The position numbers were made by a program, and so were the translations under genes. Source: Carpediemonas membranifera BICM (Eukaryota > Protista > Fornicata). From it: DNA of 64,000 bases. Numbering within the stretch: the stretch's first letter is position 1; each line of letters begins with the position of its first letter. Below, in pieces: positions 4,851-53,140 of this stretch. The notes below the pieces were generated by a model that saw only the letters and a list, made by a program, of their open reading frames with translations, did no database searches and was not told the origin of the DNA. Location: the NCBI GenBank assembly GCA_019828565.1, contig JAHDYR010000008.1, forward strand, positions 1 to 64,000, in the 5' to 3' direction.

Positions 4851-5345
4851 ATGAAATCATGTCTCGAGGATGTCCTGCAGGACATCGGGGTGCCCCTCCC
4901 GCCCGGCCTCACGCTGAAGCAGATGACGGCGGATAAGGTCGCCTCCACCAAGCCGACTAACCCTAAGTGCGTGTTCTGCGGCAAGCACGATTCCAGCATC
5001 ATCGGCCCAATCAAGTCGAGCAAGAAGGCGGGGATATACTTCCACGAGATGTGCGCGCTTAGTCTCCCAGAGGTTTGGAGAGCGGCGCCCTCGCAGCTTG
5101 TCAAGGCCGGGCTGACCCCGCATGAGACGCTGGGCGATCATTGCTGGTTCAATGTCGCCAAGTCGTTCAAGAGAGCTGGCCCGCTCAGGTGTAGCATCTG
5201 CAGCAAGCTGGGTGCGGGCGTGGGTTGCTGGGTGCCCAGTTGCCGCGTCTCCGTGCACTATCACTGTGCGTGCCAGACTGGCTGGGTGTACAAGCCGGAG
5301 CTGCACGGCCAGTTCTTCTGCGAGAAGCATCGGAAGATGGTATAG
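4851..5345 (+). CDS. Stand-alone extended PHD (C2HC + PHD) ORF created by the duplication; ATG comes from the unique flank
   Basis: Identical to the C-terminal ~159 aa of the 44098-45451 gene: CVFC..HEMC..CSIC..GC..C..HYHCA..CEKH. Confidence 0.5.
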   Translation: MKSCLEDVLQDIGVPLPPGLTLKQMTADKVASTKPTNPKCVFCGKHDSSIIGPIKSSKKAGIYFHEMCALSLPEVWRAAPSQLVKAGLTPHETLGDHCWFNVAKSFKRAGPLRCSICSKLGAGVGCWVPSCRVSVHYHCACQTGWVYKPELHGQFFCEKHRKMV

Positions 5346-7208
5346 CCTGCTGGGCGAGTGTATTGTTGTAAAGCCGCGTCAAGACCACTGGAGTGCCATA
5401 AAGTTGAAGCGAACTGCGATCATTTATGCTCAATACTTCAGTTATGGTGCGTCACGCATGACCCTTGACCCGCGCGGTGATGGCCCTGATCTTCTCGGTC
5501 AGCTCCTTCCTGCGATCGAGCTCCTTCATCAGCACACGTACCTTCCGCAGATTCTCCTCTTCGGTCTCCCGGATCCTCTTCTGCATCTCGAGCTCCTTCT
5601 GTAGGATGCGGGGGACGGTCTCATTCGTGAATCTCCTGGCCTCCATCATTTCCTGGACCTCGGCAGTCATCGTCCGAATCATCGCGCGCGCTTCTGACTC
5701 CAGCTTCTCCTTCTGCTCAGCCGCCTCGATCTTGGTGTCGGCCAGCTCGGCGCTGAGTGCATCGACCTCCTTCTGTAAGCCCTCTTGGCGCTTGATGTCC
5801 TCCTGCATGCGTTGGACCTCGCGCTTGTCGTTCTTGCGCTTCTGATCCTGCTTCAGCTCAATCATTCGCGTGACGCTCTCGATCTCCTCGTCCAGCGCTG
5901 CCTCCATTGACGTCATCGAAGCCGCCTCGGCCCTCACACTCTCGGCCTTAAGCTCCAGCTCGGTCTTGGTCTTCGCCTTGGTCGCGGCCTCCGCTTTCAG
6001 GCTCGAGTCAAAGTCAACAAGCGTCTTGCGGCACGCCTTAACCTCGGCCAGCGTCCCGTCGAGCAGGCTGACGGTGCCGGCCAGCTGCGGGGGGACGTTG
6101 TCCCTGAGGGAGTCGACGATCTGCCGCTTGGCGTCTTCAGTCTGGCGGCACTGCGCCTCGACCTGCTCCACCTGGCTTCTGATCGTGGAGAGCCCCTCCT
6201 GGAGGATGTCCCTGGCTTTGACGAGCTCGCTCGTGCCCTGCTGCCGCAGTCTCTTCTCAGCGTCCTCGAGGTCCTTCTTGTGGGCTGCCAGCCGAGCCTT
6301 GGGCGCCTCAACGCGCGCCAGGGACGACGAGGCAAGCTTGTCCAGCTCTGCACGGAGCAGCTTGATCTCTGCCTCGTTGGATGCTGTCTGCTCGACGAGC
6401 TCATTGGTGGCGCGGATGATGTCCTCGCACTCGGCCTCAATCACCTCCCTGGCGGTGAGGGTCTGCCTCCTCGAGGCCCAGCATCGCGCAGACCTGGCGT
6501 TCGGAGTTCGGGTCGTCCACGGGGAGGCCCGCGCATGCGAGGGCGGCGTCGCCCAAGCCTTCCTGCTCGCCATCCATGACGGTGCCCTCTGGCATCGCCC
6601 TGATCCTCTCTTGGTGTTCTGCGACTTGCGCGTTCATCGTGAGGCACGCGTTGTTCAAGCTTTTGAGCACGACAGGAAGGTGGGTCATCTCCTGCCCTGC
6701 CCGGGGGAACTCGCTCAGGTAGTTCATGTCCTCTTTGAGCCCCAGCTCCATCGCTGTGGCGAAGGCCTTGCTGGCGTTCTTGCGAAACTCCGCGAGGCTT
6801 CGCTTGTCGCCATCAGCAACGATGTCGATCTGTACACCAACGTGTTCGAGAGCAATGTGCCTGATGGCTCGACAGAGCGTAGGCATGGATTTCGTAAGGC
6901 TATCTTCGGATACAGCCTCCTTAAAGCCCGAAAACGCAAGCCATTCGATGATGGAGGCGACGTCGGGGCCGCCACGCGTCCGCGAGGGCGTCTTTGGCGC
7001 TTTGGCTACCGATTTTGGCACCGCAAGAGTCGTGCGTCTCTTGCCCGGCGTGCGGGCTCTCGTACTTAGCCCAAATGTCTGTCGGCGCTGCATATTGCGG
7101 AAATCTCATTCATATTCTGCACCGAAGACTACGGCCGGCACGACTGCAGACTGCTCTGCCTGTGGCATGGGTAGGCCGTAGTAATGCTGTTCTGATAGTA
7201 GCCGGCCT
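4861..7208 (+). repeat. Direct segmental duplication, copy of 44967-47312 (~2.35 kb, >99% identical)
   Basis: Sequences align throughout. Differences seen: 4864 and 4871 at the junction, SNPs 5593/45699 and 6292/46397, and 1-nt indels at 6447-6449 and 46195-46199. Confidence 0.97.
5452..7093 (-). CDS. Ndc80/Nuf2-like protein (basic tail, CH-like domain, coiled coil), copy A, +1 frameshift near 6448
   Basis: Removing the extra C at 6447-6449 (absent in copy B) joins ORFs 6437-7093 and 5452-6573 into 546 aa. Confidence 0.6.
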
Positions 7209-7273: not shown

Positions 7274-10200
7274 TCAGTGCTCAAGGCATAGTAATACATC
7301 TCTGACTCTCGGCCAGATCTCATCGCTCACCGGATCATACCGAATCGGGTTCTTTGTCGCAGCAATTTCATCCGCATCCAGGAGGCAAGCAGGGTCTTCA
7401 GCAGCCGAGTTCACACTGAACATGACGGGTAGTACAAGGTCAGACAGACGATAATCCACCCAAGCCTCGTCACAGGCCAGGGTCTGGAGCGTTGGCACGA
7501 GGGAATGCCGGACGGCCGACAGAATGCCCTCGTTGGGGCAGACGGTGATGATTCCAAGGACCCTGCGGATAGTCTCATAGGCTGCGGGACATGGTTTCGT
7601 GGCCGCACCAGTGAGGATCTCAGCCAGGAGGGAAACACCTAAAACTGCATCGACTGTGGTCGACCCGATATGACTCCAGATCGAGTCAGTCACGGACACC
7701 GTGACGCCAGCTTGGCCTCTGCTGGTCTCCAGGGAGATGGTGTCTCCCGTGAATGCGAGGTATGCAATGACGAGAGGGGTCGTGAGGTCCGTCTGAGTCA
7801 GGAACCTGCTGTGCATTTCCCGTAGCATCGACGTAGCGACTGTGTTGGAGTCAAACTGTAGCAGTACGGGCAGCATGAGCCTTACCAGGGACCAGAGGGG
7901 CCATCCTGCCGGGCTGATTCCCATCATGGAGGCAACGCTGGCCTCATCAGGAGTCATAGACTTTGGCTTGACCGCGGCAAGTGAAGAAAACGGATGGCCC
8001 GACACAGAGAGCGCCTTCGGGTCGAGGATCGCCAGCATCAGGTTGTTTGCCGCCTTCCAGTCCGGCCTAGTGAGCAGGCAGAATGCCGAGAGCCAGAAGA
8101 GGGTCCGTATGTGCTCTGCATTGGCCTCAGAACCAAGCGCCATGTTCGAGACGACAATGGCAAGGGATGACAACGCCTCGTGCATCACAGGGCTGGGGTC
8201 GGGCGTCGCTACCTTCAGCACAGTTTCATGACAGATCTTGACGGCCGACATCGGCGAGTGAAGCAGCCCGACGAGGCATAGTGCTCGCCCCCTGGTAGAT
8301 GCGAGGGCTGGGGCGCTGGCAGGGGCAAAGGCGAGGTGCGAGGCCATCTTGAACCACTCAGACCTGGTTTGGGCCAGCTTGGCAGATGTGTTGGCGGCCA
8401 CTATGGCGAGTCTGACGAGTACGGGAAGGAGTACGTCCATGGCGGCCCCGGGCTCAGGATGGAGGAACGATTCAGCCAAACTAGGGGACGTCAGCTCAGC
8501 GTGGATCTGCTCGAGATCGGGGGACGATGCTTGGGCGATCAAACTGTGGGAGACTGCCCGGACGGTGTCATAGGCGACGGACGCGGTCTCGGGCAGCCCC
8601 ACCGTGAGGGCGAGCACGTGTAGGACAGGCGGCAATGATGCGTCCAGGTTGATACAGTCGAACGCGAGTTGGTGTATCAGGGAAAGGTAGGGGTGGGCGT
8701 CCGCTGGCCGGGCAGACTGGGCCTTGTCGATGCCGCGTCTCACCACAGCGTCCACACAGGGCGCCATGCTCTCAGCCTCACCGACCATGGCGAGTAGAGC
8801 GAGGCCGACGTCCTCGTGGGACTCGGGGTCCTTCTCAAGCGACTCCAGCACGACTCCAATGATTGATTCAACCACATCTGGAGCAGCGCCTGCGTACATG
8901 GCGAGCTGACGCCACACAACCTGCGCCAGGAGCACGCGCTGGCCTGGTAGAGCCCTGGTGAGGGCGAGACCAGCTGACACGATCTCGGGAATCCGCTCGG
9001 GCATGGTCGCGGCAACGATGGAGATGATATGGGGGACGAACTGGAGAGCGGGCATGACCAGCTCGGCGGGCATGCTTGGGGCGAGCTCCATGGCTAGAAC
9101 GCACATGTCGACCGTCAGGGCAGGCAGGGCCTGTCCGAGCTGGCTGACCACGGCGATGACAGTGGGATAGGGCAGCGGCGAGACTGAGACGACAGATGAA
9201 CCACTGCTGGCAACGAACATCCCCTTGGCGACGGACTTGTGTCCGGCGATGGGGTGCATTTTGGTCAGGACGGCGTGGACAAGGGTATAAGCGGCACTGC
9301 GGGCAACTATGTCCGCTGAGAACATGGATGCGAACCCGACTACGAGCATGCGGGCCGGGAGGACGGCCTGGCGCGTCTCCTCGCCCACTACGGCAACAGG
9401 CGCGTCGACCCGGGCCTGGTGGATGCACTCCTGGCATATAGCACTGACCTGCTCGACAGACGCGACAGGGCCGGTTAGGCGGACAGCGGGGCACACTGCT
9501 GAGGCCTCTGACACGAAGATGGTCTCCCCGTCAACGGCGACAGTGACGTCGGCGAGTGCAAAGGCGTCGACCCTGGTGGTCTGGGGGGTCGCCCCGTGCA
9601 TAGTAATGATGAGGTCCTTGGCTGAGATCGACAGCGTGGCGTCATGCCGTGACTTGGGCACTCCCAGGTCAAACGAGTGAAGGATCCTGGCATCCAGCTC
9701 CAACGACCGTGCAGTCAGCGGCATCGGCTGAGCCTTCTCACCGAGGGCCTTGCGGATCATAGACGCAGAGGTGTAGACCCGGATTTTCCGTATGTCCGCC
9801 TGGGACAGAGTTTTCGCTAAACTGCGGAGACTTGAGTCAAAGTCAGTCCCGGGACGAAGCACGTGCAGCGCCTTGAGGTTCTCTCGTGCCTCAGGGGGGA
9901 CCACAGCGAATAGTCTCATGAGCCATGCTGTCGGGACCCTTTGGGCATGGGTGCAGTCAATGACGACCTCGAATGGCAACGTCCAGAAGGGCTGGGCGAT
10001 GTCGATCATGTGCCGCAGGATCGCAGTGTGGTCGAGCTCAGCAGAGTAGTGCTCGCCGCGCCACCAGAACAGGGGACGCCTCTCGGCCGACTGGCCCGAC
10101 TGGACGAAGACGGCGGAGGCGGCCTCAAGCAGGGCTGGGTCGATGTTGTCCGAGTGGCGTTTGAACTCGTCAAGGTGCGGGGATGCGATAGAGCCAGAGT

Positions 10201-13200
10201 TAATGGCGCGAACCTTCTTAATGATCTCAGGTGGCGGCCCGAGATTATCGAGCAATGATTCGAGGGCTTCGACGGAGTCAGCATGGGTTGCGGCAAGTGT
10301 AGTGGCCATCACGCCGGACTTCTCGACGATCGAGCGGTGGATCCTGGCAGATGCATTCTCAATCTCATCCTCATTCACCGATATCGGATCCAGATTTGTG
10401 AGATCATCCATCTTATCGGCGACATCGATAATCTGCCCTAGATACTGACCCCGGGATCCCATTAGCTCAGTGATGAGGGGGTTGACACCGTCCATAACCT
10501 CATTTGACCGGCCTGCCTCATGGAACAGCATGCCGTTGCCCACCTTGATGACGACCTTTGACACATGGAGCAGGTTCCGTCGGGCGCTGACTGGTACAGA
10601 TTGCACGATCTGGTAGGCGTCAGGGGCGGCGATAGAGGGCGCTATGAACTTCAGGAATAGCACAGCCCCGGTGGCGCTGACCTTGGTGCCAGGAAACCGG
10701 CGCTCGAGGGCATCTTGCAGCTTACGGCAGACGATACGGGGGCCGAGTGGCATGGCGTCGACAGCAGCGAAAATGGCCTTCAACACGCCTCGGGAGACGT
10801 CAATGAGGCGCTGGACATTGTCCTCGATGAGGGCAGCGATCACCGCCTCGCTCTCCACGCCAGTTATGTCAGAAGACACTCGGGAACGGTCAAGCTCGAG
10901 GTCAGTGGCGCCAAGACGAATGATATCGGCTATAACCGGCTTCAGCGTGTCCTCAAGGTACTCGAGAGCGGTCAGACGGAGATACTGGGCCAGTAGCTTG
11001 GCCGGGAACGTGTTCTGACGGAGAACAGACGTAGCATCGGCCATTTCATTGATCTCCGCCTCTACGAACGAGGAGACGACGTCGATAGCGGTCTCGTGAG
11101 ATGGACAGAGCCGGAGCAAGGCCTTGGCGACGTCATCGCCCTCAGATTGGCCGGTGGTCTTCGCCAGTTGGCCCAGCAAGCCGTCGATGGGCTCCATGAA
11201 CAGGGCATCGCGGATCAGGTCGGTGGGCGGCACCTTCGTCTCCTCGGCGATAGCAGCGGTCAGTGACTCGTCAGAGTCGAGCAGCTTAGTGATGGCGGCC
11301 ATGGCAACGCCCCGACTGATGACCGAGTCGCCCTGGGTCTGCCGCACAATGAAGCTGATGGCAGTGGGGTTGGATACCAGAAGGCCGACCATGCAGGCAC
11401 GGGCGACATCCGGGTAGGCTGTGGCCAGGGGCAGCAGGGCGTTATAGTGGGTCGCCAGGTCTTGATCTGACACTATCAGGCCGTCGTACAGGAGAGTGAG
11501 TGCGGGCGAGACGGAGGACGGGTCGAGTCGTATCCACTTCCGGACGATTTCGAGCAGAATATGACGGGTGCGGTGGGGCTGGCGAAATGACACTGATGTC
11601 GAACGGCTGAACATGACCGATATGAGCTCTGGGACAATGGTGAGGAGCCTTGAGCCCCTGTTCTGGGCAGTCAGGCGGTCAGTCTGCTGGACCAGAGCAA
11701 TCAAAATGCCATCAAAGTCAGGGAGAGCAAGAGTGGCAGATTCGTTGAAAGACACAATATCTAGCACAGTTTGCGAGATATCTGCCAGGATTGCCTCGAT
11801 CTCGGCCCCGCCCACCGCCCGAGAGGCCGCCAGTGCGTTGGTAAGAACACCAACGAACCGCACATAAAGCAAGGGAGACAGGGCGTTGACCACTGCTGAC
11901 CGGGCTCGGGTCCTTATGGCTTCGTCGTGTGAGCCCAAGGCACTTACGGCCAGCTCGATGAGGCCAGGCGCGGTGGTGTCGACGGGGAGGATGGAGGGGG
12001 TGAGCAGGTTGACTGTCACACCGCCACCCAGTCCGACTGCGCTGAAGGCGAGTGTCATGGCCAAACTGTCGCCGGCAAGGGGCGACTTCCCGGCCGGGTC
12101 GGCGGCAAACAAGGCGTAGGCAGACTCACAGGCCATGCGGATCCCGCCGACGTTGGCGACGGTCGACCTGAGAACACCGATCGTCTCGAACACGTCGTTG
12201 TCCCCCGAGATGGCGGCGAGTCTCTTATAGATAAGGTAGCTGCCAGTGATGGTGTGAGTCTTGGCCACACCGGAAGGGATGATCGCCCAAAACTCCAATA
12301 GGAAGGCCAGTGCGGTCCGAGCCTGCTGTCTAGCGTTGGCGTCGGGAGAAATCGTGAGTAACACCATCCCGCACTCTAAGGCAGCGCTGGCTCTGGCTAG
12401 CGTCGATGCCACACGGCCCCAGTCGGCGGCAGAGTCGGCATTGGCCTTGAGGGCGTCAATGCTGTCTGTTATCAGCTGGACCGCTGTATCGAGCACAGTC
12501 CGTTGTGTCAGAGGGGGGCAGTGGATCAGATTCATGGTCATGGCCTGGCCCACGCGCTCAAGGGTCGAGGTCACGAAGGCAAACTGGTCCGACGTTGAGT
12601 CCAGCGCAGTTCTAAAGACGTTAGCAACACCACTGCAGCACACATCAACTGATTTGATCGTGGTGATGGCTTGGCAGAGGGCGACCCCCAAGAGGCTGCC
12701 CAGGACAGGTGTGTGTGCGTCTGGAATGAACCTTACTAGGAGGGGGTCCAGGGAAAAGAGCGTGCAGAGGGCAATGGTCAGATCAGTGGGCGCGGGCAGG
12801 ATCTTCTTTGTATCTATCATATCTACTACAGATTCAAGATCCTCTTTGAGCAGGTCGAATACAAGAGGTGCGAGCATCTCCCGGACTGAACCGAGTGTCG
12901 GATGGAACGGCATCTCGGGCGACGTGGCATCGCCGAATGCCTGGATCAAAGGCACCACCATCGGATGCGTCCTCGCGTGCAGAAGGTTGGTCAGCCGCTT
13001 GATGGTTTCAAGGGGATTAATCCGGAATGAAGCGAGGAAGTAGGCGCGGGTGTCGTCGGGCGAGAGCTCGAGCTGGTCGGCGATTAGGAGCTTCTCGACG
13101 TATGGCTGCAGGTCTGGGACAATATGCCTTAGCACACAGATATCGCCCTTGTCAACAAGTGTGGAGAGGCCCACCAGGTCGATCACCGCCGCTGCTGCAA

Positions 13201-14260
13201 AGGACGCGAACCGGGCATCGAATGTCTGGGGGAGGATTGATTCCCGTAGCCGTTGGCAGTATGAGAAGAGGACAGGATACTCTTGGGCCGCCCGGGCGGG
13301 CTGGAGGAAGACGGCGAGCATGATGTCGGGGCAGCAGACCAAACCTGCTGCTATGGCGCGGTACAGTGCCATCAATGTCTGCGGGTGCTTGTGCGTGGTA
13401 TCCTCTGCCCATTGAAAGAGTGTCACACAGAGCAGGTCTGGGTCACCCCTCATTCGACCCTCAGAAGTCGCCAGGACCACGAACTGCCGGCCCAAGGCAT
13501 GGGCCCAGCCCAGGACAGCGGAGTAAACAAGCGTGGCGATCGCTTTCCTGGATATGGGTGACACTATTGCTCTGAATGTGGCAGGCTCGGACAGGGGGGT
13601 GAGTGCCGTGAACAGGGCAGACACCCGCGGTCCTGTGTACTCTAGCGCGCCCAGTAGATGGCAGTTAATGCTCACAGTGGCTGGGTCGGCATCCTGCGCC
13701 AGCGTCTGGGGGAGCAGTAGGTCAATGAGCGTTGCAAAGTAGTCCCGCGACAGTGAATGGATGAGATTCGCGGCAATGTGACGAAGGTGGGGCTCGTTAG
13801 AGATAGCAGCGAACTCCTCCGCTACAGATACGATGAATGTGATGTCCTTTGAGGGAAGAGGAGTCCCACCGACACGGGAATTGAGGTCGATGGCCGAAGT
13901 CATGGTCTGAGCCAGGAATGCCTGGATGAGATCCACAGAATGAGAGTATGTCTTATATAACGTCTCTAGCTCCTCAAGCACTGCCGAAACTGAGTCTTGC
14001 ACGAGAGAAAGCATCGCGTTTGCGTAATTCGACGCGTCTGCATTCGTCCCGACCACTCGGTTGTGTTCAAGTTCCAAAGGAACAGGATTTTGACTGAGAA
14101 TGCTGTTCAGCTGCGATGAAAAGACACGCAGCATCCTCGTCGTTGAATGCGAAAGTTCTGCATAAACTGCTCGTCCACCCCAGCGCGGTCGGTGGAGGTG
14201 TCGACACTCTGTATCGACAGTTTTTGCGTCCAATACGGTGTGTGCACGCGCCTGAATCAT
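7274..14260 (-). CDS. NF1: Neurofibromin-like RasGAP (RasGAP + Sec14/PH + helical repeats); start is 14260 or 14134
   Basis: 2328-aa ORF. Arg finger VLRQNTFPAKLL, GAVLFLKFIAPSIAAPD, NLLHVSKV, then Sec14-like PFEVVIDCT..WL..LF..VPPEARENL. Confidence 0.85.
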   Translation of the reverse strand: MIQARAHTVLDAKTVDTECRHLHRPRWGGRAVYAELSHSTTRMLRVFSSQLNSILSQNPVPLELEHNRVVGTNADASNYANAMLSLVQDSVSAVLEELETLYKTYSHSVDLIQAFLAQTMTSAIDLNSRVGGTPLPSKDITFIVSVAEEFAAISNEPHLRHIAANLIHSLSRDYFATLIDLLLPQTLAQDADPATVSINCHLLGALEYTGPRVSALFTALTPLSEPATFRAIVSPISRKAIATLVYSAVLGWAHALGRQFVVLATSEGRMRGDPDLLCVTLFQWAEDTTHKHPQTLMALYRAIAAGLVCCPDIMLAVFLQPARAAQEYPVLFSYCQRLRESILPQTFDARFASFAAAAVIDLVGLSTLVDKGDICVLRHIVPDLQPYVEKLLIADQLELSPDDTRAYFLASFRINPLETIKRLTNLLHARTHPMVVPLIQAFGDATSPEMPFHPTLGSVREMLAPLVFDLLKEDLESVVDMIDTKKILPAPTDLTIALCTLFSLDPLLVRFIPDAHTPVLGSLLGVALCQAITTIKSVDVCCSGVANVFRTALDSTSDQFAFVTSTLERVGQAMTMNLIHCPPLTQRTVLDTAVQLITDSIDALKANADSAADWGRVASTLARASAALECGMVLLTISPDANARQQARTALAFLLEFWAIIPSGVAKTHTITGSYLIYKRLAAISGDNDVFETIGVLRSTVANVGGIRMACESAYALFAADPAGKSPLAGDSLAMTLAFSAVGLGGGVTVNLLTPSILPVDTTAPGLIELAVSALGSHDEAIRTRARSAVVNALSPLLYVRFVGVLTNALAASRAVGGAEIEAILADISQTVLDIVSFNESATLALPDFDGILIALVQQTDRLTAQNRGSRLLTIVPELISVMFSRSTSVSFRQPHRTRHILLEIVRKWIRLDPSSVSPALTLLYDGLIVSDQDLATHYNALLPLATAYPDVARACMVGLLVSNPTAISFIVRQTQGDSVISRGVAMAAITKLLDSDESLTAAIAEETKVPPTDLIRDALFMEPIDGLLGQLAKTTGQSEGDDVAKALLRLCPSHETAIDVVSSFVEAEINEMADATSVLRQNTFPAKLLAQYLRLTALEYLEDTLKPVIADIIRLGATDLELDRSRVSSDITGVESEAVIAALIEDNVQRLIDVSRGVLKAIFAAVDAMPLGPRIVCRKLQDALERRFPGTKVSATGAVLFLKFIAPSIAAPDAYQIVQSVPVSARRNLLHVSKVVIKVGNGMLFHEAGRSNEVMDGVNPLITELMGSRGQYLGQIIDVADKMDDLTNLDPISVNEDEIENASARIHRSIVEKSGVMATTLAATHADSVEALESLLDNLGPPPEIIKKVRAINSGSIASPHLDEFKRHSDNIDPALLEAASAVFVQSGQSAERRPLFWWRGEHYSAELDHTAILRHMIDIAQPFWTLPFEVVIDCTHAQRVPTAWLMRLFAVVPPEARENLKALHVLRPGTDFDSSLRSLAKTLSQADIRKIRVYTSASMIRKALGEKAQPMPLTARSLELDARILHSFDLGVPKSRHDATLSISAKDLIITMHGATPQTTRVDAFALADVTVAVDGETIFVSEASAVCPAVRLTGPVASVEQVSAICQECIHQARVDAPVAVVGEETRQAVLPARMLVVGFASMFSADIVARSAAYTLVHAVLTKMHPIAGHKSVAKGMFVASSGSSVVSVSPLPYPTVIAVVSQLGQALPALTVDMCVLAMELAPSMPAELVMPALQFVPHIISIVAATMPERIPEIVSAGLALTRALPGQRVLLAQVVWRQLAMYAGAAPDVVESIIGVVLESLEKDPESHEDVGLALLAMVGEAESMAPCVDAVVRRGIDKAQSARPADAHPYLSLIHQLAFDCINLDASLPPVLHVLALTVGLPETASVAYDTVRAVSHSLIAQASSPDLEQIHAELTSPSLAESFLHPEPGAAMDVLLPVLVRLAIVAANTSAKLAQTRSEWFKMASHLAFAPASAPALASTRGRALCLVGLLHSPMSAVKICHETVLKVATPDPSPVMHEALSSLAIVVSNMALGSEANAEHIRTLFWLSAFCLLTRPDWKAANNLMLAILDPKALSVSGHPFSSLAAVKPKSMTPDEASVASMMGISPAGWPLWSLVRLMLPVLLQFDSNTVATSMLREMHSRFLTQTDLTTPLVIAYLAFTGDTISLETSRGQAGVTVSVTDSIWSHIGSTTVDAVLGVSLLAEILTGAATKPCPAAYETIRRVLGIITVCPNEGILSAVRHSLVPTLQTLACDEAWVDYRLSDLVLPVMFSVNSAAEDPACLLDADEIAATKNPIRYDPVSDEIWPRVRDVLLCLEH

Positions 14261-28005: not shown

Positions 28006-29007
28006 AATATACTCTACTACACCGCAGAGTCGTTCCTCTACAGACTGCCCCTGGGCGTCATCCTGCTCGTCCTGTCGACTCTGGCCTCCTCCTTCATCAC
28101 ACCATGGATCCGGCTGATTCTGGGTCTATCCCGGGGCTCGGTGTTCTCCATCTTTCTGTACATCCTCGGAGCACTGGGCACTATCGTCGCAGTCATTGAG
28201 TATAGGTCAGGCACGTTCAGCCAGCTTGTAGCTCTCATCCGCCGAAAGCCTGGAGGGCCGTTGTTGCCCCTGCCCATGCGCGGAGGGAGGTATAGCGCCC
28301 TGCTGAGACGGAGCCTGAAGCTGCTCGAGCAGACCATGGGCCACGGTGTTCCGTTTAGCATCATCGTGCTCTCGTCGGCCGTTTATTTCGTGTTCCAGCT
28401 TTTTTTCTCTGAACAGGAAAGGGTCAATGTTTTTGGGTTTACCGCGGTCGATCAGATCGTCCTGCCTTTCTATATTATGCCGTACACCTTTATCATGTAC
28501 CTTTCGCCGCTTAGATCCCTTTTTACGGAAACTGAAATCAAGTCGGCGAAAAAGATTCGGCGGACACAATCAAAGGCGCTCCAACTGTCAGAGTACGACC
28601 TTCTCGCCCCAGGAGACGATCGCCCCCGGCCCATTCCCATGGCGTGGCTGATGAACGCCCTCCACTTCACATGGGATGGTGCTCGTATCTTCTGGGTTGA
28701 CCTCAAGTCCGCATTTACCGTTGAGTTCGCCCCGCTGGAGATCATGGCGTATAGACTCTTCCTCAACTCCAGAGCGGTGCTCTACTTCTACTTTGCTGTC
28801 ATGTATGAGCTCAACACGGTTTACTTCGAGCTCTGCTTGGTGAGGGTCTGCCTTTCTTGGGTCGGTACCGCCATGGTCACCGTGTTCGCGCCCTGGTTCC
28901 TGGGGATGCTGAAGCCCGAGAGGAGGAGGACGATGCACCCATTGAATCTGGCCCTGAAGGCGACGGGGACAGCCATTTGTCTGTTCGTGTTGTGGCTTTT
29001 ACAGTGA
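28006..29007 (+). pseudogene. 5'-truncated duplicate of the multi-pass membrane protein gene 52139-53470
   Basis: Lacks the first ~110 codons and the ATG; the remaining frame is intact. Confidence 0.75.
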
Positions 29008-29718
29008 GTTGGGCAGGATAGTTTAATACAGCAAATGATGTGGATAAACGAGACACGGTTTCTATATCTCGGACAGAGGCCGGGTTTGACTGACGTGTCT
29101 TCCTTCAGGTGGTGGAACAGTCTGAGAAAGTTTTATTCACATTCATGACCGGTCACATGCTGTGTAAGCGCAGTCGGACCGTCATGGTAACCAGGAGATT
29201 TGGGTCATGTATTTGCTGTCACTGACGTCGACGAGGACCTGCTTTGTGGCCGTTGGTCTGAGGCCACAAGCCATCCTCGGGCTCAGCCACACTGCTGTGT
29301 TGCCACCGTCGGCCTCCAGGTCTGCCGCGTGTCGATTGTCGTTAAACTGCTCTTGTTGTTTATGAGTGTCGCACTCAAGTCTGAGGGTCGGTCACTTGTC
29401 CGTGTAGCAGTGTTGCACAGAGAATACTGCCGGCCATGCAAGACCGAGTTCGATGACTCAACTCATTCCTGGCCCAGCTCTCAGTTCGCCTACGAATGAC
29501 ACCATATCGCGAACGAAACAGAACAAGGGTTGTTCCAGTCGTGGTTGACAGAGCGCGTAGCATACGTGAGGTCAAGTCTTGGACGCCCAGCCCGATCATG
29601 ATGAGGGGTCGAGACATGTCTTTCACTCCATCTGACGCTGCGAACAACCACCTCGACCGATCAATGCCACACTCCCGCGATAAACGTCACCCCGCCGTAA
29701 CAACAGCCTTTACTACAT

Positions 29719-30838
29719 CTACATTACGTCGTCGTCCTTGATGTCCCACGGCTGCACCGTCCTGTGGCTCGTCTGGGCCGGCTCCCACATCTGCACGCTG
29801 CATTCTCCACCCGCAGACACCAGCGTCCACGGCCTGCTGCTCCACTGTAGATCATTCACAGTCTCTTCATGTCCACGGTGGTCGAACACTAGCTCGGGCG
29901 GACCGTCCTCCTTGTCACCCGTCGCCTGCTCTCTCCCGACCAGAGCCAAGTCCCACACCCGCACCGACCCGTCTGTCGCCCCCGTGGCAAAGACGGTGGG
30001 TATGGCGGGGGACCATTCGAGGGCGTATATGTCGTCCTTGTGAGTCTCTGGCGCATAGTACAGGGGCGTCCCGAGGGCCCGGAGGTCTCTAAGTACCCAG
30101 TCCTTGCCCGCACACGTGATTACATAGTTATCGGGGCCGTGTTTGCCGCATATAACATCATCGTAGTGCGCCTCCTCCACAACAGCGGCGGGCGTCGCCA
30201 TCCTAGTGTCCAAAACTGCCAGAGACTTTCCGTCGGTGGAAACTAGCATCGTGTGATTGTCGAGCCAGTCGATGTCGTTGATCGTGCGGTCGGCCCAGGA
30301 TGTCTTGAGCGACATGGCCTGCTGGTCACCGCCCTCGAGGTCCCAATAGACCACCGCGCCCTCAGTGGAAGCTGTCGAGAGATAGTTCGTGGGCGCCCAG
30401 GAGATCGGGAACATGTCGCCTGAGGCCCCGTGGAGGGAGGTCGGGAGCGTTGTCTTGTGGTCCTTGAACAGAAGCACTGTCCCGTCCGCCTGCCGGGCCG
30501 CGAGCCGGTCCGAGAGGGGCCCGCGGTTGCCCGGGGCCTGGCGGATCCGGTTGCATTCCGAAGGCAGGGCGCACAGCTCGGAGCTGGAGACGTGGATCCC
30601 CTTGTGACGGAGCTCGTGGCGCTTGCAGTGAAGGTAGTGGTCGTGTCGGCCTTCGATGGTCTGCTTTGTGGTAATGGAAACAGTGGCGGTGTTCATGGCG
30701 AAGGTCCCGTCTTCGTTTGACACGCTGGAGATGAATGAGTACGTCTCCGTCTCCTTCTCGTTGTCGATCTCGAAGTCTCGGAGGGAAATGGCCGTCTGGC
30801 ACGTGGAGCCCTGCTCGATCTCCACAAACAGGTCATAT
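29719..30838 (-). pseudogene. 5'-truncated duplicate of the RBBP4-like gene
   Basis: Lacks the first ~20 codons; there is no in-frame ATG in the new flank before a TAA. Confidence 0.75.
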
Positions 30839-30950
30839 GGAGGATATGATGAAGAGTTGACAAGTGACAGTGTGGTGGTGGCTTAAGGTCTATACCGGTG
30901 ACTCCTCGACTAACGGTGACATTGTTGAGGGTCCAGGATCGGTGTTTATG

Positions 30951-44097: not shown

Positions 44098-45451
44098 ATG
44101 AACAGAGATTGGTTCGTAGCAACCGAAATAGCATGGGGGAAAGTCGATTCCTTCCCCTGGTGGCCGTGTGTGGTCGTTAAGGATCCTCCTGAAGCAATCA
44201 TTGCGTCGCGCATCCATCTAGTACGCTACGAGTATTGCGTTTGTACTTTTGACACCAATTATGACACAGGTTAAGTTCTTTACCGGCGATCCTGACGAGG
44301 AAGACGAGTTTGCCTGGGTTACTCCCGAAGATCTCAAGAAATGGCATGAATTCGACCCCATGCCTCTCTCTGATGACATCAAGGCGCCATACGAGGAAGC
44401 TAAGGCCGCGTTGGCCATGCAGTCAGAGCCCCAGGCCCCCTACCTCGTCGGTGCAGCCATCCCGACCGACATCATCCGGACGGTGCAGTTCCCCTACATG
44501 CGGCTCGAGAAGGCCATCATGAACAGGGCCCTGGAGCATCTCGGGGGCAAGGGAAAGGATTCATACAGCAATATGAAGAAGCTGCTGCACGACGACCTTG
44601 AGACAGGCCCACTGTCTGAACCGGCCGATTTCTGGGGCTGCGTGCTCGCTGACGGGACCCTCTTGACCGTAGGAGACTGTGTCAGGGTCCAGCACGGCGA
44701 CAGGTGGGATGGCATCCGTGTCGAGCGCATCTACGTCGGCAGTGCCCAAGGCCAGCCCGTGTTCGTCCATGGCACCAGCTTGGCCGGCCGGTCTGACGGC
44801 AGTCGGCTTCTTTCAGTAGAAAAGCGCGGCCGCATGGCGACTTGGGCCGAGGTGACCCGGATCACAGTTGTCCGGGCTGACGAGCCTGGCGAGACGGGCT
44901 TCTGCTGCCCAGACCTCGAGCCCCTGCCCGAGCTGCCTGAGGAGGACGCGTTGATTGAGCCGCCAAGTCCCGAGGACGTCCTGCAGGACATCGGGGTGCC
45001 CCTCCCGCCCGGCCTCACGCTGAAGCAGATGACGGCGGATAAGGTCGCCTCCACCAAGCCGACTAACCCTAAGTGCGTGTTCTGCGGCAAGCACGATTCC
45101 AGCATCATCGGCCCAATCAAGTCGAGCAAGAAGGCGGGGATATACTTCCACGAGATGTGCGCGCTTAGTCTCCCAGAGGTTTGGAGAGCGGCGCCCTCGC
45201 AGCTTGTCAAGGCCGGGCTGACCCCGCATGAGACGCTGGGCGATCATTGCTGGTTCAATGTCGCCAAGTCGTTCAAGAGAGCTGGCCCGCTCAGGTGTAG
45301 CATCTGCAGCAAGCTGGGTGCGGGCGTGGGTTGCTGGGTGCCCAGTTGCCGCGTCTCCGTGCACTATCACTGTGCGTGCCAGACTGGCTGGGTGTACAAG
45401 CCGGAGCTGCACGGCCAGTTCTTCTGCGAGAAGCATCGGAAGATGGTATAG
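44098..45451 (+). CDS. PWWP-BAH-extended PHD chromatin reader; intron 44239-44269
   Basis: AWGKVDSFPWWPC..VKFF..FAWV (PWWP); DGTLLTVGDCVRV..RVERIY (BAH-like); C2HC + PHD at the C-terminus. Confidence 0.85.
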
Positions 45452-47312
45452 CCTGCTGGGCGAGTGTATTGTTGTAAAGCCGCGTCAAGACCACTGGAGT
45501 GCCATAAAGTTGAAGCGAACTGCGATCATTTATGCTCAATACTTCAGTTATGGTGCGTCACGCATGACCCTTGACCCGCGCGGTGATGGCCCTGATCTTC
45601 TCGGTCAGCTCCTTCCTGCGATCGAGCTCCTTCATCAGCACACGTACCTTCCGCAGATTCTCCTCTTCGGTCTCCCGGATCCTCTTCTGCATCTCGAGTT
45701 CCTTCTGTAGGATGCGGGGGACGGTCTCATTCGTGAATCTCCTGGCCTCCATCATTTCCTGGACCTCGGCAGTCATCGTCCGAATCATCGCGCGCGCTTC
45801 TGACTCCAGCTTCTCCTTCTGCTCAGCCGCCTCGATCTTGGTGTCGGCCAGCTCGGCGCTGAGTGCATCGACCTCCTTCTGTAAGCCCTCTTGGCGCTTG
45901 ATGTCCTCCTGCATGCGTTGGACCTCGCGCTTGTCGTTCTTGCGCTTCTGATCCTGCTTCAGCTCAATCATTCGCGTGACGCTCTCGATCTCCTCGTCCA
46001 GCGCTGCCTCCATTGACGTCATCGAAGCCGCCTCGGCCCTCACACTCTCGGCCTTAAGCTCCAGCTCGGTCTTGGTCTTCGCCTTGGTCGCGGCCTCCGC
46101 TTTCAGGCTCGAGTCAAAGTCAACAAGCGTCTTGCGGCACGCCTTAACCTCGGCCAGCGTCCCGTCGAGCAGGCTGACGGTGCCGGCCAGCTGCGGGGGA
46201 CGTTGTCCCTGAGGGAGTCGACGATCTGCCGCTTGGCGTCTTCAGTCTGGCGGCACTGCGCCTCGACCTGCTCCACCTGGCTTCTGATCGTGGAGAGCCC
46301 CTCCTGGAGGATGTCCCTGGCTTTGACGAGCTCGCTCGTGCCCTGCTGCCGCAGTCTCTTCTCAGCGTCCTCGAGGTCCTTCTTGTGGGCTGCCAGACGA
46401 GCCTTGGGCGCCTCAACGCGCGCCAGGGACGACGAGGCAAGCTTGTCCAGCTCTGCACGGAGCAGCTTGATCTCTGCCTCGTTGGATGCTGTCTGCTCGA
46501 CGAGCTCATTGGTGGCGCGGATGATGTCCTCGCACTCGGCCTCAATCACCTCCTGGCGGTGAGGGTCTGCCTCCTCGAGGCCCAGCATCGCGCAGACCTG
46601 GCGTTCGGAGTTCGGGTCGTCCACGGGGAGGCCCGCGCATGCGAGGGCGGCGTCGCCCAAGCCTTCCTGCTCGCCATCCATGACGGTGCCCTCTGGCATC
46701 GCCCTGATCCTCTCTTGGTGTTCTGCGACTTGCGCGTTCATCGTGAGGCACGCGTTGTTCAAGCTTTTGAGCACGACAGGAAGGTGGGTCATCTCCTGCC
46801 CTGCCCGGGGGAACTCGCTCAGGTAGTTCATGTCCTCTTTGAGCCCCAGCTCCATCGCTGTGGCGAAGGCCTTGCTGGCGTTCTTGCGAAACTCCGCGAG
46901 GCTTCGCTTGTCGCCATCAGCAACGATGTCGATCTGTACACCAACGTGTTCGAGAGCAATGTGCCTGATGGCTCGACAGAGCGTAGGCATGGATTTCGTA
47001 AGGCTATCTTCGGATACAGCCTCCTTAAAGCCCGAAAACGCAAGCCATTCGATGATGGAGGCGACGTCGGGGCCGCCACGCGTCCGCGAGGGCGTCTTTG
47101 GCGCTTTGGCTACCGATTTTGGCACCGCAAGAGTCGTGCGTCTCTTGCCCGGCGTGCGGGCTCTCGTACTTAGCCCAAATGTCTGTCGGCGCTGCATATT
47201 GCGGAAATCTCATTCATATTCTGCACCGAAGACTACGGCCGGCACGACTGCAGACTGCTCTGCCTGTGGCATGGGTAGGCCGTAGTAATGCTGTTCTGAT
47301 AGTAGCCGGCCT
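44967..47312 (+). repeat. Donor copy of the direct duplication (matches 4861-7208)
   Basis: Here the ePHD is continuous with its intact parent gene, so this is the source copy. Confidence 0.95.
45558..47197 (-). CDS. Ndc80/Nuf2-like protein, copy B, -1 frameshift at 46195-46199
   Basis: G5 here versus G6 in copy A (6089-6094); restoring the base gives the same 546-aa protein. Confidence 0.6.
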
Positions 47313-50248: not shown

Positions 50249-51427
50249 ATGGAGCTGAACAAGCCGCAGGAGGAAGAAGAAACGTTCAAAGATGCTATCC
50301 CTTATCTATATGACCTGTTTGTGGAGATCGAGCAGGGCTCCACGTGCCAGACGGCCATTTCCCTCCGAGACTTCGAGATCGACAACGAGAAGGAGACGGA
50401 GACGTACTCATTCATCTCCAGCGTGTCAAACGAAGACGGGACCTTCGCCATGAACACCGCCACTGTTTCCATTACCACAAAGCAGACCATCGAAGGCCGA
50501 CACGACCACTACCTTCACTGCAAGCGCCACGAGCTCCGTCACAAGGGGATCCACGTCTCCAGCTCCGAGCTGTGCGCCCTGCCTTCGGAATGCAACCGGA
50601 TCCGCCAGGCCCCGGGCAACCGCGGGCCCCTCTCGGACCGGCTCGCGGCCCGGCAGGCGGACGGGACAGTGCTTCTGTTCAAGGACCACAAGACAACGCT
50701 CCCGACCTCCCTCCACGGGGCCTCAGGCGACATGTTCCCGATCTCCTGGGCGCCCACGAACTATCTCTCGACAGCTTCCACTGAGGGCGCGGTGGTCTAT
50801 TGGGACCTCGAGGGCGGTGACCAGCAGGCCATGTCGCTCAAGACATCCTGGGCCGACCGCACGATCAACGACATCGACTGGCTCGACAATCACACGATGC
50901 TAGTTTCCACCGACGGAAAGTCTCTGGCAGTTTTGGACACTAGGATGGCGACGCCCGCCGCTGTTGTGGAGGAGGCGCACTACGATGATGTTATATGCGG
51001 CAAACACGGCCCCGATAACTATGTAATCACGTGTGCGGGCAAGGACTGGGTACTTAGAGACCTCCGGGCCCTCGGGACGCCCCTGTACTATGCGCCAGAG
51101 ACTCACAAGGACGACATATACGCCCTCGAATGGTCCCCCGCCATACCCACCGTCTTTGCCACGGGGGCGACAGACGGGTCGGTGCGGGTGTGGGACTTGG
51201 CTCTGGTCGGGAGAGAGCAGGCGACGGGTGACAAGGAGGACGGTCCGCCCGAGCTAGTGTTCGACCACCGTGGACATGAAGAGACTGTGAATGATCTACA
51301 GTGGAGCAGCAGGCCGTGGACGCTGGTGTCTGCGGGTGGAGAATGCAGCGTGCAGATGTGGGAGCCGGCCCAGACGAGCCACAGGACGGTGCAGCCGTGG
51401 GACATCAAGGACGACGACGTAATGTAG
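50249..51427 (+). CDS. RBBP4: RBBP4/MSI1-like WD40 histone chaperone
   Basis: PYLYDL, ECNRIR, VRVWDL..G.EQ...D.EDGPPELVFDHRGH and PWTLVS. Confidence 0.88.
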   Translation: MELNKPQEEEETFKDAIPYLYDLFVEIEQGSTCQTAISLRDFEIDNEKETETYSFISSVSNEDGTFAMNTATVSITTKQTIEGRHDHYLHCKRHELRHKGIHVSSSELCALPSECNRIRQAPGNRGPLSDRLAARQADGTVLLFKDHKTTLPTSLHGASGDMFPISWAPTNYLSTASTEGAVVYWDLEGGDQQAMSLKTSWADRTINDIDWLDNHTMLVSTDGKSLAVLDTRMATPAAVVEEAHYDDVICGKHGPDNYVITCAGKDWVLRDLRALGTPLYYAPETHKDDIYALEWSPAIPTVFATGATDGSVRVWDLALVGREQATGDKEDGPPELVFDHRGHEETVNDLQWSSRPWTLVSAGGECSVQMWEPAQTSHRTVQPWDIKDDDVM

Positions 51428-53140
51428 ATGTAGTAAAGGCTGTTGTTACGGCGGGGTGACGTTTATCGCGGGAGTGTGGCATTGATCGGTCGAGGTGGTT
51501 GTTCGCAGCGTCAGATGGAGTGAAAGACATGTCTCGACCCCTCATCATGATCGGGCTGGGCGTCCAAGACTTGACCTCACGTATGCTACGCGCTCTGTCA
51601 ACCACGACTGGAACAACCCTTGTTCTGTTTCGTTCGCGATATGGTGTCATTCGTAGGCGAACTGAGAGCTGGGCCAGGAATGAGTTGAGTCATCGAACTC
51701 GGTCTTGCATGGCCGGCAGTATTCTCTGTGCAACACTGCTACACGGACAAGTGACCGACCCTCAGACTTGAGTGCGACACTCATAAACAACAAGAGCAGT
51801 TTAACGACAATCGACACGCGGCAGACCTGGAGGCCGACGGTGGCAACACAGCAGTGTGGCTGAGCCCGAGGATGGCTTGTGGCCTCAGACCAACGGCCAC
51901 AAAGCAGGTCCTCGTCGACGTCAGTGACAGCAAATACATGACCCAAATCTCCTGGTTACCATGACGGTCCGACTGCGCTTACACAGCATGTGACCGGTCA
52001 TGAATGTGAATAAAACTTTCTCAGACTGTTCCACCACCTGAAGGAAGACACGTCAGTCAAACCCGGCCTCTGTCCGAGATATAGAAACCGTGTCTCGTTT
52101 ATCCACATCATTTGCTGTATTAAACTATCCTGCCCAACTCACTGTAAAAGCCACAACACGAACAGACAAATGGCTGTCCCCGTCGCCTTCAGGGCCAGAT
52201 TCAATGGGTGCATCGTCCTCCTCCTCTCGGGCTTCAGCATCCCCAGGAACCAGGGCGCGAACACGGTGACCATGGCGGTACCGACCCAAGAAAGGCAGAC
52301 CCTCACCAAGCAGAGCTCGAAGTAAACCGTGTTGAGCTCATACATGACAGCAAAGTAGAAGTAGAGCACCGCTCTGGAGTTGAGGAAGAGTCTATACGCC
52401 ATGATCTCAGCGGGGCGAACTCAACGGTAAATGCGGACTTGAGGTCAACCCAGAAGATACGAGCACCATCCCATGTGAAGTGGAGGGCGTTCATCAGCCA
52501 CGCCATGGGAATGGGCCGGGGGCGATCGTCTCCTGGGGCGAGAAGGTCGTACTCTGACAGTTGGAGCGCCTTTGATTGTGTCCGCCGAATCTTTTTCGCC
52601 GACTTGATTTCAGTTTCCGTAAAAAGGGATCTAAGCGGCGAAAGGTACATGATAAAGGTGTACGGCATAATATAGAAAGGCAGGACGATCTGATCGACCG
52701 CGGTAAACCCAAAAACATTGACCCTTTCCTGTTCAGGAGAAAAAAAGCTGGAACACGAAATAAACGGCCGACGAGAGCACGATGATGCTAAACGGAACAC
52801 CGTGGCCCATGGTCTGCTCGAGCAGCTTCAGGCTCCGTCTCAGCAGGGCGCTATACCTCCCTCCGCGCATGGGCAGGGGCAACAACGGCCCTCCAGGCTT
52901 TCGGCGGATGAGAGCTACAAGCTGGCTGAACGTGCCTGACCTATACTCAATGACTGCGACGATAGTGCCCAGTGCTCCGAGGATGTACAGAAAGATGGAG
53001 AACACCGAGCCCCGGGATAGACCCAGAATCAGCCGGATCCATGGTGTGATGAAGGAGGAGGCCAGAGTCGACAGGACGAGCAGGATGACGCCCAGGGGCA
53101 GTCTGTAGAGGAACGACTCTGCGGTGTAGTAGAGTATATT
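50308..53140. repeat. Donor copy of the inverted duplication (matches 28006-30838)
   Basis: Both genes that cross the boundaries are complete here. Confidence 0.95.

What the first reader, a model, noticed from the sequence alone, without database searches (positions are those of the whole stretch)
45558..47197. Hidden, highly divergent Ndc80-like kinetochore protein, frameshifted in both assembled copies
Seen: combining the two copies (5452-7093 and 45558-47197) gives a 546-aa protein. It has a ~40-aa basic tail with R-x-T Aurora-type and TP CDK-type sites (MQRRQTFG, KRRTT, RTPG, KTPS), a ~110-aa helical domain, then a long coiled coil. By-eye comparison with human Ndc80 as I recall it: VASIIEWLAFSGFKEAVSEDSL vs [22 protein letters not shown]; MELG vs KDLG; AGQEMTHLPVVLKSL vs VGAPHTWPHIVAAL. 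Established: tail-CH-coiled coil is the Ndc80 architecture. As I recall, Carpediemonas was reported to lack the Ndc80 complex. Inference: if this is Carpediemonas or a relative, this may be the missing microtubule-binding kinetochore subunit. Divergence plus an indel splitting each copy into anonymous coiled-coil ORFs would explain why it was overlooked.
Basis: partly seen in the sequence, partly recalled or inferred. Interest (0 to 1): 0.9.

Follow-up and report, generated by a model that had tools for sequence, protein, structure and literature searches.

The report
Probable missing Ndc80 of Carpediemonas
This gene probably encodes a very divergent Ndc80, the protein that ties chromosomes to spindle microtubules, in a protist that was published as having lost it; no alignment or structure test confirms the identity yet.

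Summary
The window is from Carpediemonas membranifera. Two near-identical copies (5452-7093, 45558-47197, minus strand) each carry a 1-bp homopolymer indel; together they give 546 aa. A third, intact copy lies on contig C8 (97% identical) and is already annotated as 'Smc' (KAG9396233.1). So divergence, not frameshifts, hid it. Short-read contigs restore the base missing in copy 2. dN/dS between copies is 0.08. The protein has a basic 44-aa tail with Aurora- and CDK-type sites, a five-helix domain, and a coiled coil broken at about 284-288 and 331-347, the Ndc80 layout. A protein-language-model search ranks Ndc80 clusters first (0.92, 192 shared features), ahead of Nuf2, IFT81 and CCDC22/93. 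IFT57, CLUAP1, CCDC22 and CCDC93 have their own genes elsewhere. Against: no HMM, BLAST or fold search supports it, there are no relatives to build a profile from, both AlphaFold models are low-confidence, and no Nuf2 or Spc25 was found. Verdict: probable cryptic Ndc80 orthologue (about 0.75). It would overturn the 2021 claim that Carpediemonas lacks the Ndc80 complex; I found no paper reporting it. The scan noted what is probably the C8 copy before (s1-536207, unchecked).

The parts
45558..47197 (-). Copy 2 of the Ndc80-like gene (donor position, between an intact ePHD gene and Utp14); no intron
47066..47197 (-). Basic N-terminal tail, aa 1-44 (net +11; R-x-T at 6, 21, 22; T-P-x-K/R at 15, 35)
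46733..47065 (-). Five-helix domain, aa about 45-155; inferred NN-type calponin-homology domain
   Evidence: helix pattern; language-model hits; fold itself not confirmed
46553..46720 (-). Acidic, Gly/Pro-containing linker with two short helices, aa about 160-215 (position of the Ndc80 head-to-shaft region; inferred)
46208..46552 (-). First coiled-coil stretch, aa about 216-330, with a helix break at 284-288 (candidate hinge, window 46334-46348)
46158..46207 (-). Pro/Gly interruption of the coil, aa about 331-347 (candidate shortened Ndc80 loop)
   Evidence: loop definition from PMC10308368
46195..46199 (+). G5 run that is G6 in the other copies and in short-read contigs: the copy-2 frameshift, an assembly error
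45558..46157 (-). Second coiled-coil stretch to the stop, aa about 348-546
5452..7093 (-). Copy 1 (derived duplicate)
6447..6449 (+). C3 run that is C2 in the other two copies: the copy-1 frameshift; probably an assembly error, not directly covered by contigs of this copy type
4858..7208 (+). 2.35-kb direct duplicate of 44964-47312, with the 3' part of the neighbouring ePHD gene
44964..47312 (+). Donor block of the duplication

Best explanation
The gene family (three copies: two on C9, one intact on C8) encodes the Ndc80/Hec1 subunit of the outer kinetochore of C. membranifera, diverged beyond HMM detection. Shown: a real, selected, probably transcribed 546-547-aa protein with a basic phospho-site tail, a helical domain and an interrupted coiled coil. 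Inferred: the helical domain is an NN-CH domain that, with the basic tail, binds spindle microtubules; Aurora/INCENP and CDK phosphorylate the tail to loosen wrong attachments; the coil pairs with an equally cryptic Nuf2 and joins Spc24/Spc25-like subunits at its C-terminal end.
For: ESM Atlas feature search, residues 1-260: ranks 1-4 are Ndc80_HEC clusters (0.89-0.85), followed by other NN-CH families, IFT81_CH (rank 10), Nuf2 (17, 19), CCDC22/IFT57/CCDC93 (29). Intact full length: first hit 0.92 with 192 of 256 features, the top three are Ndc80 clusters, and no other family appears before Nuf2 at rank 13. Layout matches PMC10308368 and PMC5371998: basic tail, CH, hinge, loop, about 200 aa of coil after the loop. 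IFT57, CLUAP1, CCDC93 and CCDC22 have separate genes. dN/dS 0.08. Aurora, INCENP and a CenpA candidate are present; Ndc80 is found in Kipferlia and some diplomonads but was also missed in Giardia, where Nuf2, Spc24 and Spc25 are found.
Against: No Pfam hit to Ndc80_HEC, NDC80_loop or Nuf2, although the genome's CCDC22 and CLUAP1 do hit Ndc80_HEC weakly (E 0.14, 0.087). No PDB sequence hit. No relatives in 5.8 billion or 1.84 billion proteins or in metagenome contigs. AlphaFold models have pLDDT 49-52 and match no CH structure. The two Atlas searches are one kind of evidence without E-values. The candidate loop (about 15 aa) is shorter than the 30 or more described. No Nuf2 or Spc25 found. No localisation.
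Confidence: 0.75

Rival explanations
1. It is another NN-CH plus coiled-coil protein (augmin/HAUS6- or HAUS7-like, an IFT81-related tubulin binder, or a lineage-specific paralogue) that binds microtubules outside the kinetochore.
For: IFT81_CH and CCDC22/93 clusters appear in the N-terminal feature search. IFT81_CH and HAUS6_N find nothing in the genome, so those slots are not shown to be filled. In Paradiplonema the nearest Ndc80/Nuf2 look-alikes turned out to be CCDC93 and Cluap1 (PMC11633173). Weak local similarity to the genome's CLUAP1 domain (rank 4 of 967 pieces, E about 1).
Against: Ndc80 clusters outrank all of these, and the full-length list shows only Ndc80 and Nuf2 sets. CCDC22, CCDC93, IFT57 and CLUAP1 have their own genes, and in CCDC22 and CCDC93 the domain starts at the first residues without a basic tail. 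An unchecked scan note reports a separate IFT81 gene (s1-522045).
Confidence: 0.11
2. It is Nuf2, the CH-domain partner of Ndc80, rather than Ndc80 itself. The kinetochore conclusion would stand.
For: Nuf2 clusters score 0.88-0.89 at full length, close to Ndc80 at 0.91-0.92.
Against: The basic tail belongs to Ndc80, and Nuf2 is one continuous helix opposite the loop (PMC9993044); this protein has both a tail and a Pro/Gly break.
Confidence: 0.05
3. It is an unrelated, lineage-specific coiled-coil protein, and the language-model similarity comes from generic features.
For: All alignment and fold searches are blank. Shuffled proteins reach 0.9 in 4-10% of Atlas searches, and a third of them give ten hits from one clan.
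Against: The search with residues 1-260 returns several different families whose common element is the NN-CH domain. The family hit is the one predicted beforehand. Tail, hinge and loop positions fit.
Confidence: 0.09

Closest known systems
Ndc80/Hec1 (PF03801 Ndc80_HEC, PF24487 NDC80_loop)
   Same: Basic N-terminal tail with Aurora-type sites, helical domain of CH size, long coiled coil with a hinge-like break and a later loop-like break, about 200 aa of coil after the loop; top language-model match.
   Different: No detectable HMM similarity; tail 44 aa against about 80 in human; candidate loop about 15 aa against 30 or more; three gene copies; partners not identified.
Nuf2 (PF03800)
   Same: NN-CH plus coiled coil; next-ranked family at full length.
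   Different: [quoted passage not shown]
NN-CH outparalogues IFT81, IFT57, CLUAP1, CCDC22, CCDC93, HAUS6
   Same: Same domain clan and the same head-plus-coil plan.
   Different: Four have separate genes in this genome; none gives a significant alignment with the candidate.
Cryptic kinetochore orthologues of Plasmodium and Tetrahymena (PMC11633173; bioRxiv 10.1101/2025.11.28.691167)
   Same: Conventional kinetochore subunits first scored absent because of extreme divergence.
   Different: Those were confirmed by proteomics, localisation and deep profiles; this one rests on a language model and architecture.

Membership tests
Ndc80/Hec1 | Basic, unstructured N-terminal tail with several Aurora B-type sites | tested here: met
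   aa 1-44, net +11, R-x-T at 6, 21, 22; no helix predicted. Motifs only; phosphorylation not shown.
Ndc80/Hec1 | Sequence match to the Ndc80_HEC profile (PF03801) | tested here: not met
   No hit at E up to 10 with HMMER filters on. The profile also fails on Giardia by the authors' table, so this lowers but does not exclude membership.
Ndc80/Hec1 | NN-type calponin-homology fold after the tail | tested here: inconclusive
   Five helices of fitting size and NN-CH families in the feature search, but models at pLDDT 49-52 match no CH structure.
Ndc80/Hec1 | Closer to Ndc80 than to other NN-CH families | tested here: inconclusive
   Ndc80 ranks first in both Atlas searches; margins are 0.03-0.05, with no alignment or tree.
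Ndc80/Hec1 | Long coiled coil with a hinge and a loop insertion before the last ~200 aa | tested here: inconclusive
   Breaks at 284-288 and 331-347 fit in position; no PF24487 hit; loop shorter than described.
Ndc80/Hec1 | Heterotetramer with Nuf2, Spc24 and Spc25 | not testable with these tools
   PF03800 and PF08234 find nothing; candidate partners in scan notes could not be located; no multimer prediction available.
Ndc80/Hec1 | Kinetochore localisation and microtubule binding | not testable with these tools
   Needs experiments.
Nuf2 | Continuous helix opposite the Ndc80 loop, no basic tail | tested here: not met
   Tail and Pro/Gly break present; no PF03800 hit.
IFT57 / CLUAP1 / CCDC22 / CCDC93 | Match to the family Pfam model | tested here: not met
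   Each model finds a different gene in the genome, not this one.
IFT81 / HAUS6 | Match to IFT81_CH or HAUS6_N | tested here: inconclusive
   No match here or anywhere in the genome.
SMC (the public annotation of the C8 copy) | ABC-type ATPase head and hinge domains | tested here: not met
   547 aa with no SMC or ATPase Pfam domain; the name is a generic coiled-coil label.

The most novel reading that the evidence does not exclude
Carpediemonas keeps Ndc80 but has really lost Nuf2, Spc24/Spc25, Mis12, Knl1 and CENP-C, so Ndc80 works as a homodimer or with new partners in a minimal kinetochore unlike any described.
Probability: 0.12. Interest if true: 0.92.

Novelty: new member of a known kind. 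Interest (0 to 1): 0.78.

Why it matters
Salas-Leiva et al. 2021 (PMC8516963) reported all four Ndc80 complex subunits absent and called the working of the Carpediemonas kinetochore without them a mystery; a 2024 paper still says the loss appears to hold (PMC11633173). A cryptic Ndc80 would remove one of the very few claimed losses of the core microtubule-binding kinetochore module, leave Euglenozoa as the main exception, and warn that other claimed absences in this genome (ORC, Cdc6) may be detection failures. It also gives a named bait (KAG9396233.1, residues 146-692) for antibodies, pull-downs and multimer screens.

Tried and rejected
Frameshifts as the reason the gene was missed: rejected, an intact copy is annotated. 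Real pseudogenisation of copy 2: rejected by short-read contigs. Pfam, PDB sequence, 5.8-billion, 1.84-billion and metagenome searches: no relatives. Two AlphaFold runs without a real alignment: low confidence; five fold searches uninformative. An attempt to deepen an NN-CH profile from the genome's four paralogues found nothing, and the shallow profile did not single out the candidate. The joined 546-aa model was built only inside local scripts for comparison with the intact copy; all searches used pieces by reference or the natural intact protein P0003.

Full report
Observation. The two stretches are copies of one intronless minus-strand gene inside a 2.35-kb direct duplication, 4858-7208 and 44964-47312, 99.7% identical. 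Over the gene they differ by two substitutions and two single-base indels in short homopolymer runs: copy 1 has an extra base at 6447-6449 (near codon 215), copy 2 lacks one at 46195-46199 (near codon 333). Joined in a local script they give 546 aa. Copy 2 lies between an intact ePHD gene and Utp14, while the block with copy 1 holds only the 3' part of the ePHD gene, so copy 1 is the derived one.

Organism and third copy. An exact look-up places the 364-aa and 373-aa pieces in one cluster with KAG9396233.1, 692 aa, 'Chromosome partition protein Smc [Carpediemonas membranifera]'. The genome has 24.2 Mb in 69 contigs, as in Table 1 of PMC8516963. A genome search finds exactly three copies; the third, on contig C8 at about 948.9-950.6 kb, is 95% identical in DNA and has an unbroken frame. 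Its residues 146-692 match the joined model at 529 of 545. The 145 extra N-terminal residues of the annotation are probably an over-long gene model: the C9 copies have an in-frame stop four codons upstream of the ATG and homology between loci starts about 9 bp before the ATG. An intact protein was in the searched proteome and was missed through divergence alone.

Are the frameshifts real? Logan contigs of runs X1 and X2 (apparently one data set filed twice) put the missing G back at 46194 at full depth, so copy 2 is intact in the organism. Both alleles at 46397, where copies 1 and 2 differ, occur in contigs, so both C9 copies exist. The copy-1 indel is covered only by a C8-type contig, so it is not directly tested. 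The assembly is from Nanopore reads polished with short reads, and the other large duplication in the window also carries exactly two reciprocal 1-bp indels; an unpolished error is the likely cause. The contigs cover 45568-47196 and the neighbouring gene but nothing upstream of the ATG, and total 10 Mb for a 24-Mb genome. That looks like RNA and suggests transcription, but the tool marks RNA as a guess and contigs cannot show starts or levels.

Selection. C8 against C9 gives 54 synonymous and 16 non-synonymous changes, dN/dS 0.08; even the tail is constrained (17 against 3) and all five phospho-motifs are kept. Codons 291-545 have only 2 synonymous differences against 52 in codons 1-290, which points to gene conversion of the 3' half (inference).

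Anatomy. Residues 1-44 are basic (12 K/R, 1 D/E), with R-x-T sites at 6, 21 and 22 and T-P-x-K/R sites at 15 and 35. Among 102 ORFs of 300 aa or more from the window and 200 kb of C8, only one other independent ORF has so basic a start. Residues 45-165 are predicted as five helices. An acidic Gly/Pro linker with two short helices follows, then coiled coil from about 216 to the end, broken at 284-288 and by a Pro/Gly stretch at 331-347. Human Ndc80 has an 80-residue basic tail phosphorylated by Aurora B, a CH domain, a hinge at 359-362 and a loop at 421-450 (PMC10308368, PMC5371998); Nuf2 is one continuous helix opposite the loop (PMC9993044). The order and rough spacing fit: tail end to hinge 240 aa here against 280, hinge to loop about 45 against 60, loop to end about 200 against about 190 (human length 642 is from my own knowledge). 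The candidate loop is shorter than the 30 or more residues described.

Homology evidence. The only positive test is the ESM Atlas feature search. Residues 1-260 return Ndc80_HEC clusters at ranks 1-4 (0.89-0.85), then IFT81_CH, Nuf2 and a CCDC22/IFT57/CCDC93 cluster, families whose shared element is the NN-CH domain. The intact 547 aa return Ndc80 clusters first (0.92 with 192 features; 0.91; 0.91), and the first other family is Nuf2 at rank 13. By the tool's own figures this favours a same-family hit, and the family is the one named beforehand. The two searches are one kind of evidence and give no alignment or E-value. Everything else is blank: Pfam, PDB sequences, the large protein collections and metagenome contigs. 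With no relatives, AlphaFold gave pLDDT 52 and 49, and fold searches of these models found no CH protein and nothing significant; this neither supports nor refutes the fold. One point counts against: the genome's CCDC22 and CLUAP1 score weakly on the Ndc80_HEC model (E 0.14 and 0.087), while the candidate does not.

Exclusion of paralogues. PMC11633173 warns that CCDC93 and Cluap1 mimic Ndc80 and Nuf2 in such searches. Here IFT57 (C4), CLUAP1 (C1), CCDC93 and CCDC22 (both C65) are separate, easily detected genes, and none aligns significantly with the candidate. IFT81_CH and HAUS6_N find nothing in the genome, so those two rivals are not closed; an unchecked note reports an IFT81 without its CH domain elsewhere (s1-522045).

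Mechanism. Most likely the protein is the Ndc80 subunit of a conventional but fast-evolving outer kinetochore: head and tail bind microtubules, Aurora and CDK tune the tail, and the coil pairs with a cryptic Nuf2 and reaches Spc24/Spc25. Aurora, INCENP and a CenpA candidate are listed for this species, and the same table finds Ndc80 in Kipferlia, Spironucleus, Trepomonas and Trichomonas but not in Giardia or Monocercomonoides, which have Nuf2. Ndc80 is thus known to drop below detection in metamonads. Every functional step is inferred from the family; none is shown. Partners were not found: PF03800 and PF08234 are blank, and the scan's Nuf2, Spc24 and Spc25 candidates could not be located or tested.

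Novelty and scores. PMC8516963 states that all four subunits are absent, PMC11633173 says in 2024 that the loss appears to hold, and five searches of the library found no later report of a Carpediemonas Ndc80; subscription papers are not covered. The scan's note s1-536207 (1665 letters) equals the C8 frame counted from an ATG seven codons upstream, so it is probably the same gene and is not independent evidence. I put Ndc80 orthology at about 0.75, Nuf2 at 0.05, another NN-CH protein at 0.11 and no CH domain at 0.09. It is a new, very divergent member of a known family; the interest (0.78) comes from the published claim it would overturn and the concrete bait it offers.

Left out. The joined model was never sent to a search tool.

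Noticed in passing
window 28006-30841 and 50305-53140: 2.83-kb inverted duplication, 99.9% identical, also with two reciprocal 1-bp indels; suggests that frameshifts in recent duplicates of this assembly are polishing errors.
   Followed up: partly
G000:C8:948920-950618 (L003) against window copies: Synonymous divergence is high in codons 1-290 and almost nil in 291-545: probable gene conversion between contigs. Ten of the 16 amino-acid changes lie in residues 1-93 region's helical part and tail side (12 of 16 before residue 94).
   Followed up: partly
KAG9396233.1 / L003:1073-1507: The public gene model carries about 145 extra N-terminal residues that are absent from the other copies and is named 'Smc'; both look wrong.
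   Followed up: partly
L003:536-1260 and G000:C8 about 947.1-947.8 kb: Upstream of the C8 copy lie a short frame with a Cys/His pattern resembling a Mutator-type zinc finger (by eye; no Pfam hit) and a 689-bp repeat with a 99% copy near C8 896.5-897.2 kb. RPL21 lies downstream.
   Followed up: partly
L037:829-2484 (C65), L035:1069-2577 (C65), L007 (C4), L013 (C1): CCDC22, CCDC93, IFT57 and CLUAP1 orthologues of C. membranifera; CCDC22 and CLUAP1 cross-hit the Ndc80_HEC model weakly.
   Followed up: yes
whole genome G000: No match for IFT81_CH or HAUS6_N; fits an unchecked note of an IFT81 without its CH domain.
   Followed up: partly
window 7274-14260 (-): 2328-aa neurofibromin-like protein (RasGAP plus CRAL-TRIO) right beside copy 1.
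   Followed up: no
window 4851-5345 (+): The duplication creates a frame that holds only the ePHD finger of the donor gene, with an ATG at the junction.
   Followed up: partly
G000:C8:927445-930012 (+): Kinesin with N-terminal and linker T-P repeats (CDK-type sites) 19 kb from the intact copy; possibly mitotic (by eye).
   Followed up: no
PMC8516963 Supplementary Data 4: Ndc80 is also scored absent in Giardia and Monocercomonoides, which have Nuf2; the same language-model search could find those too.
   Followed up: no
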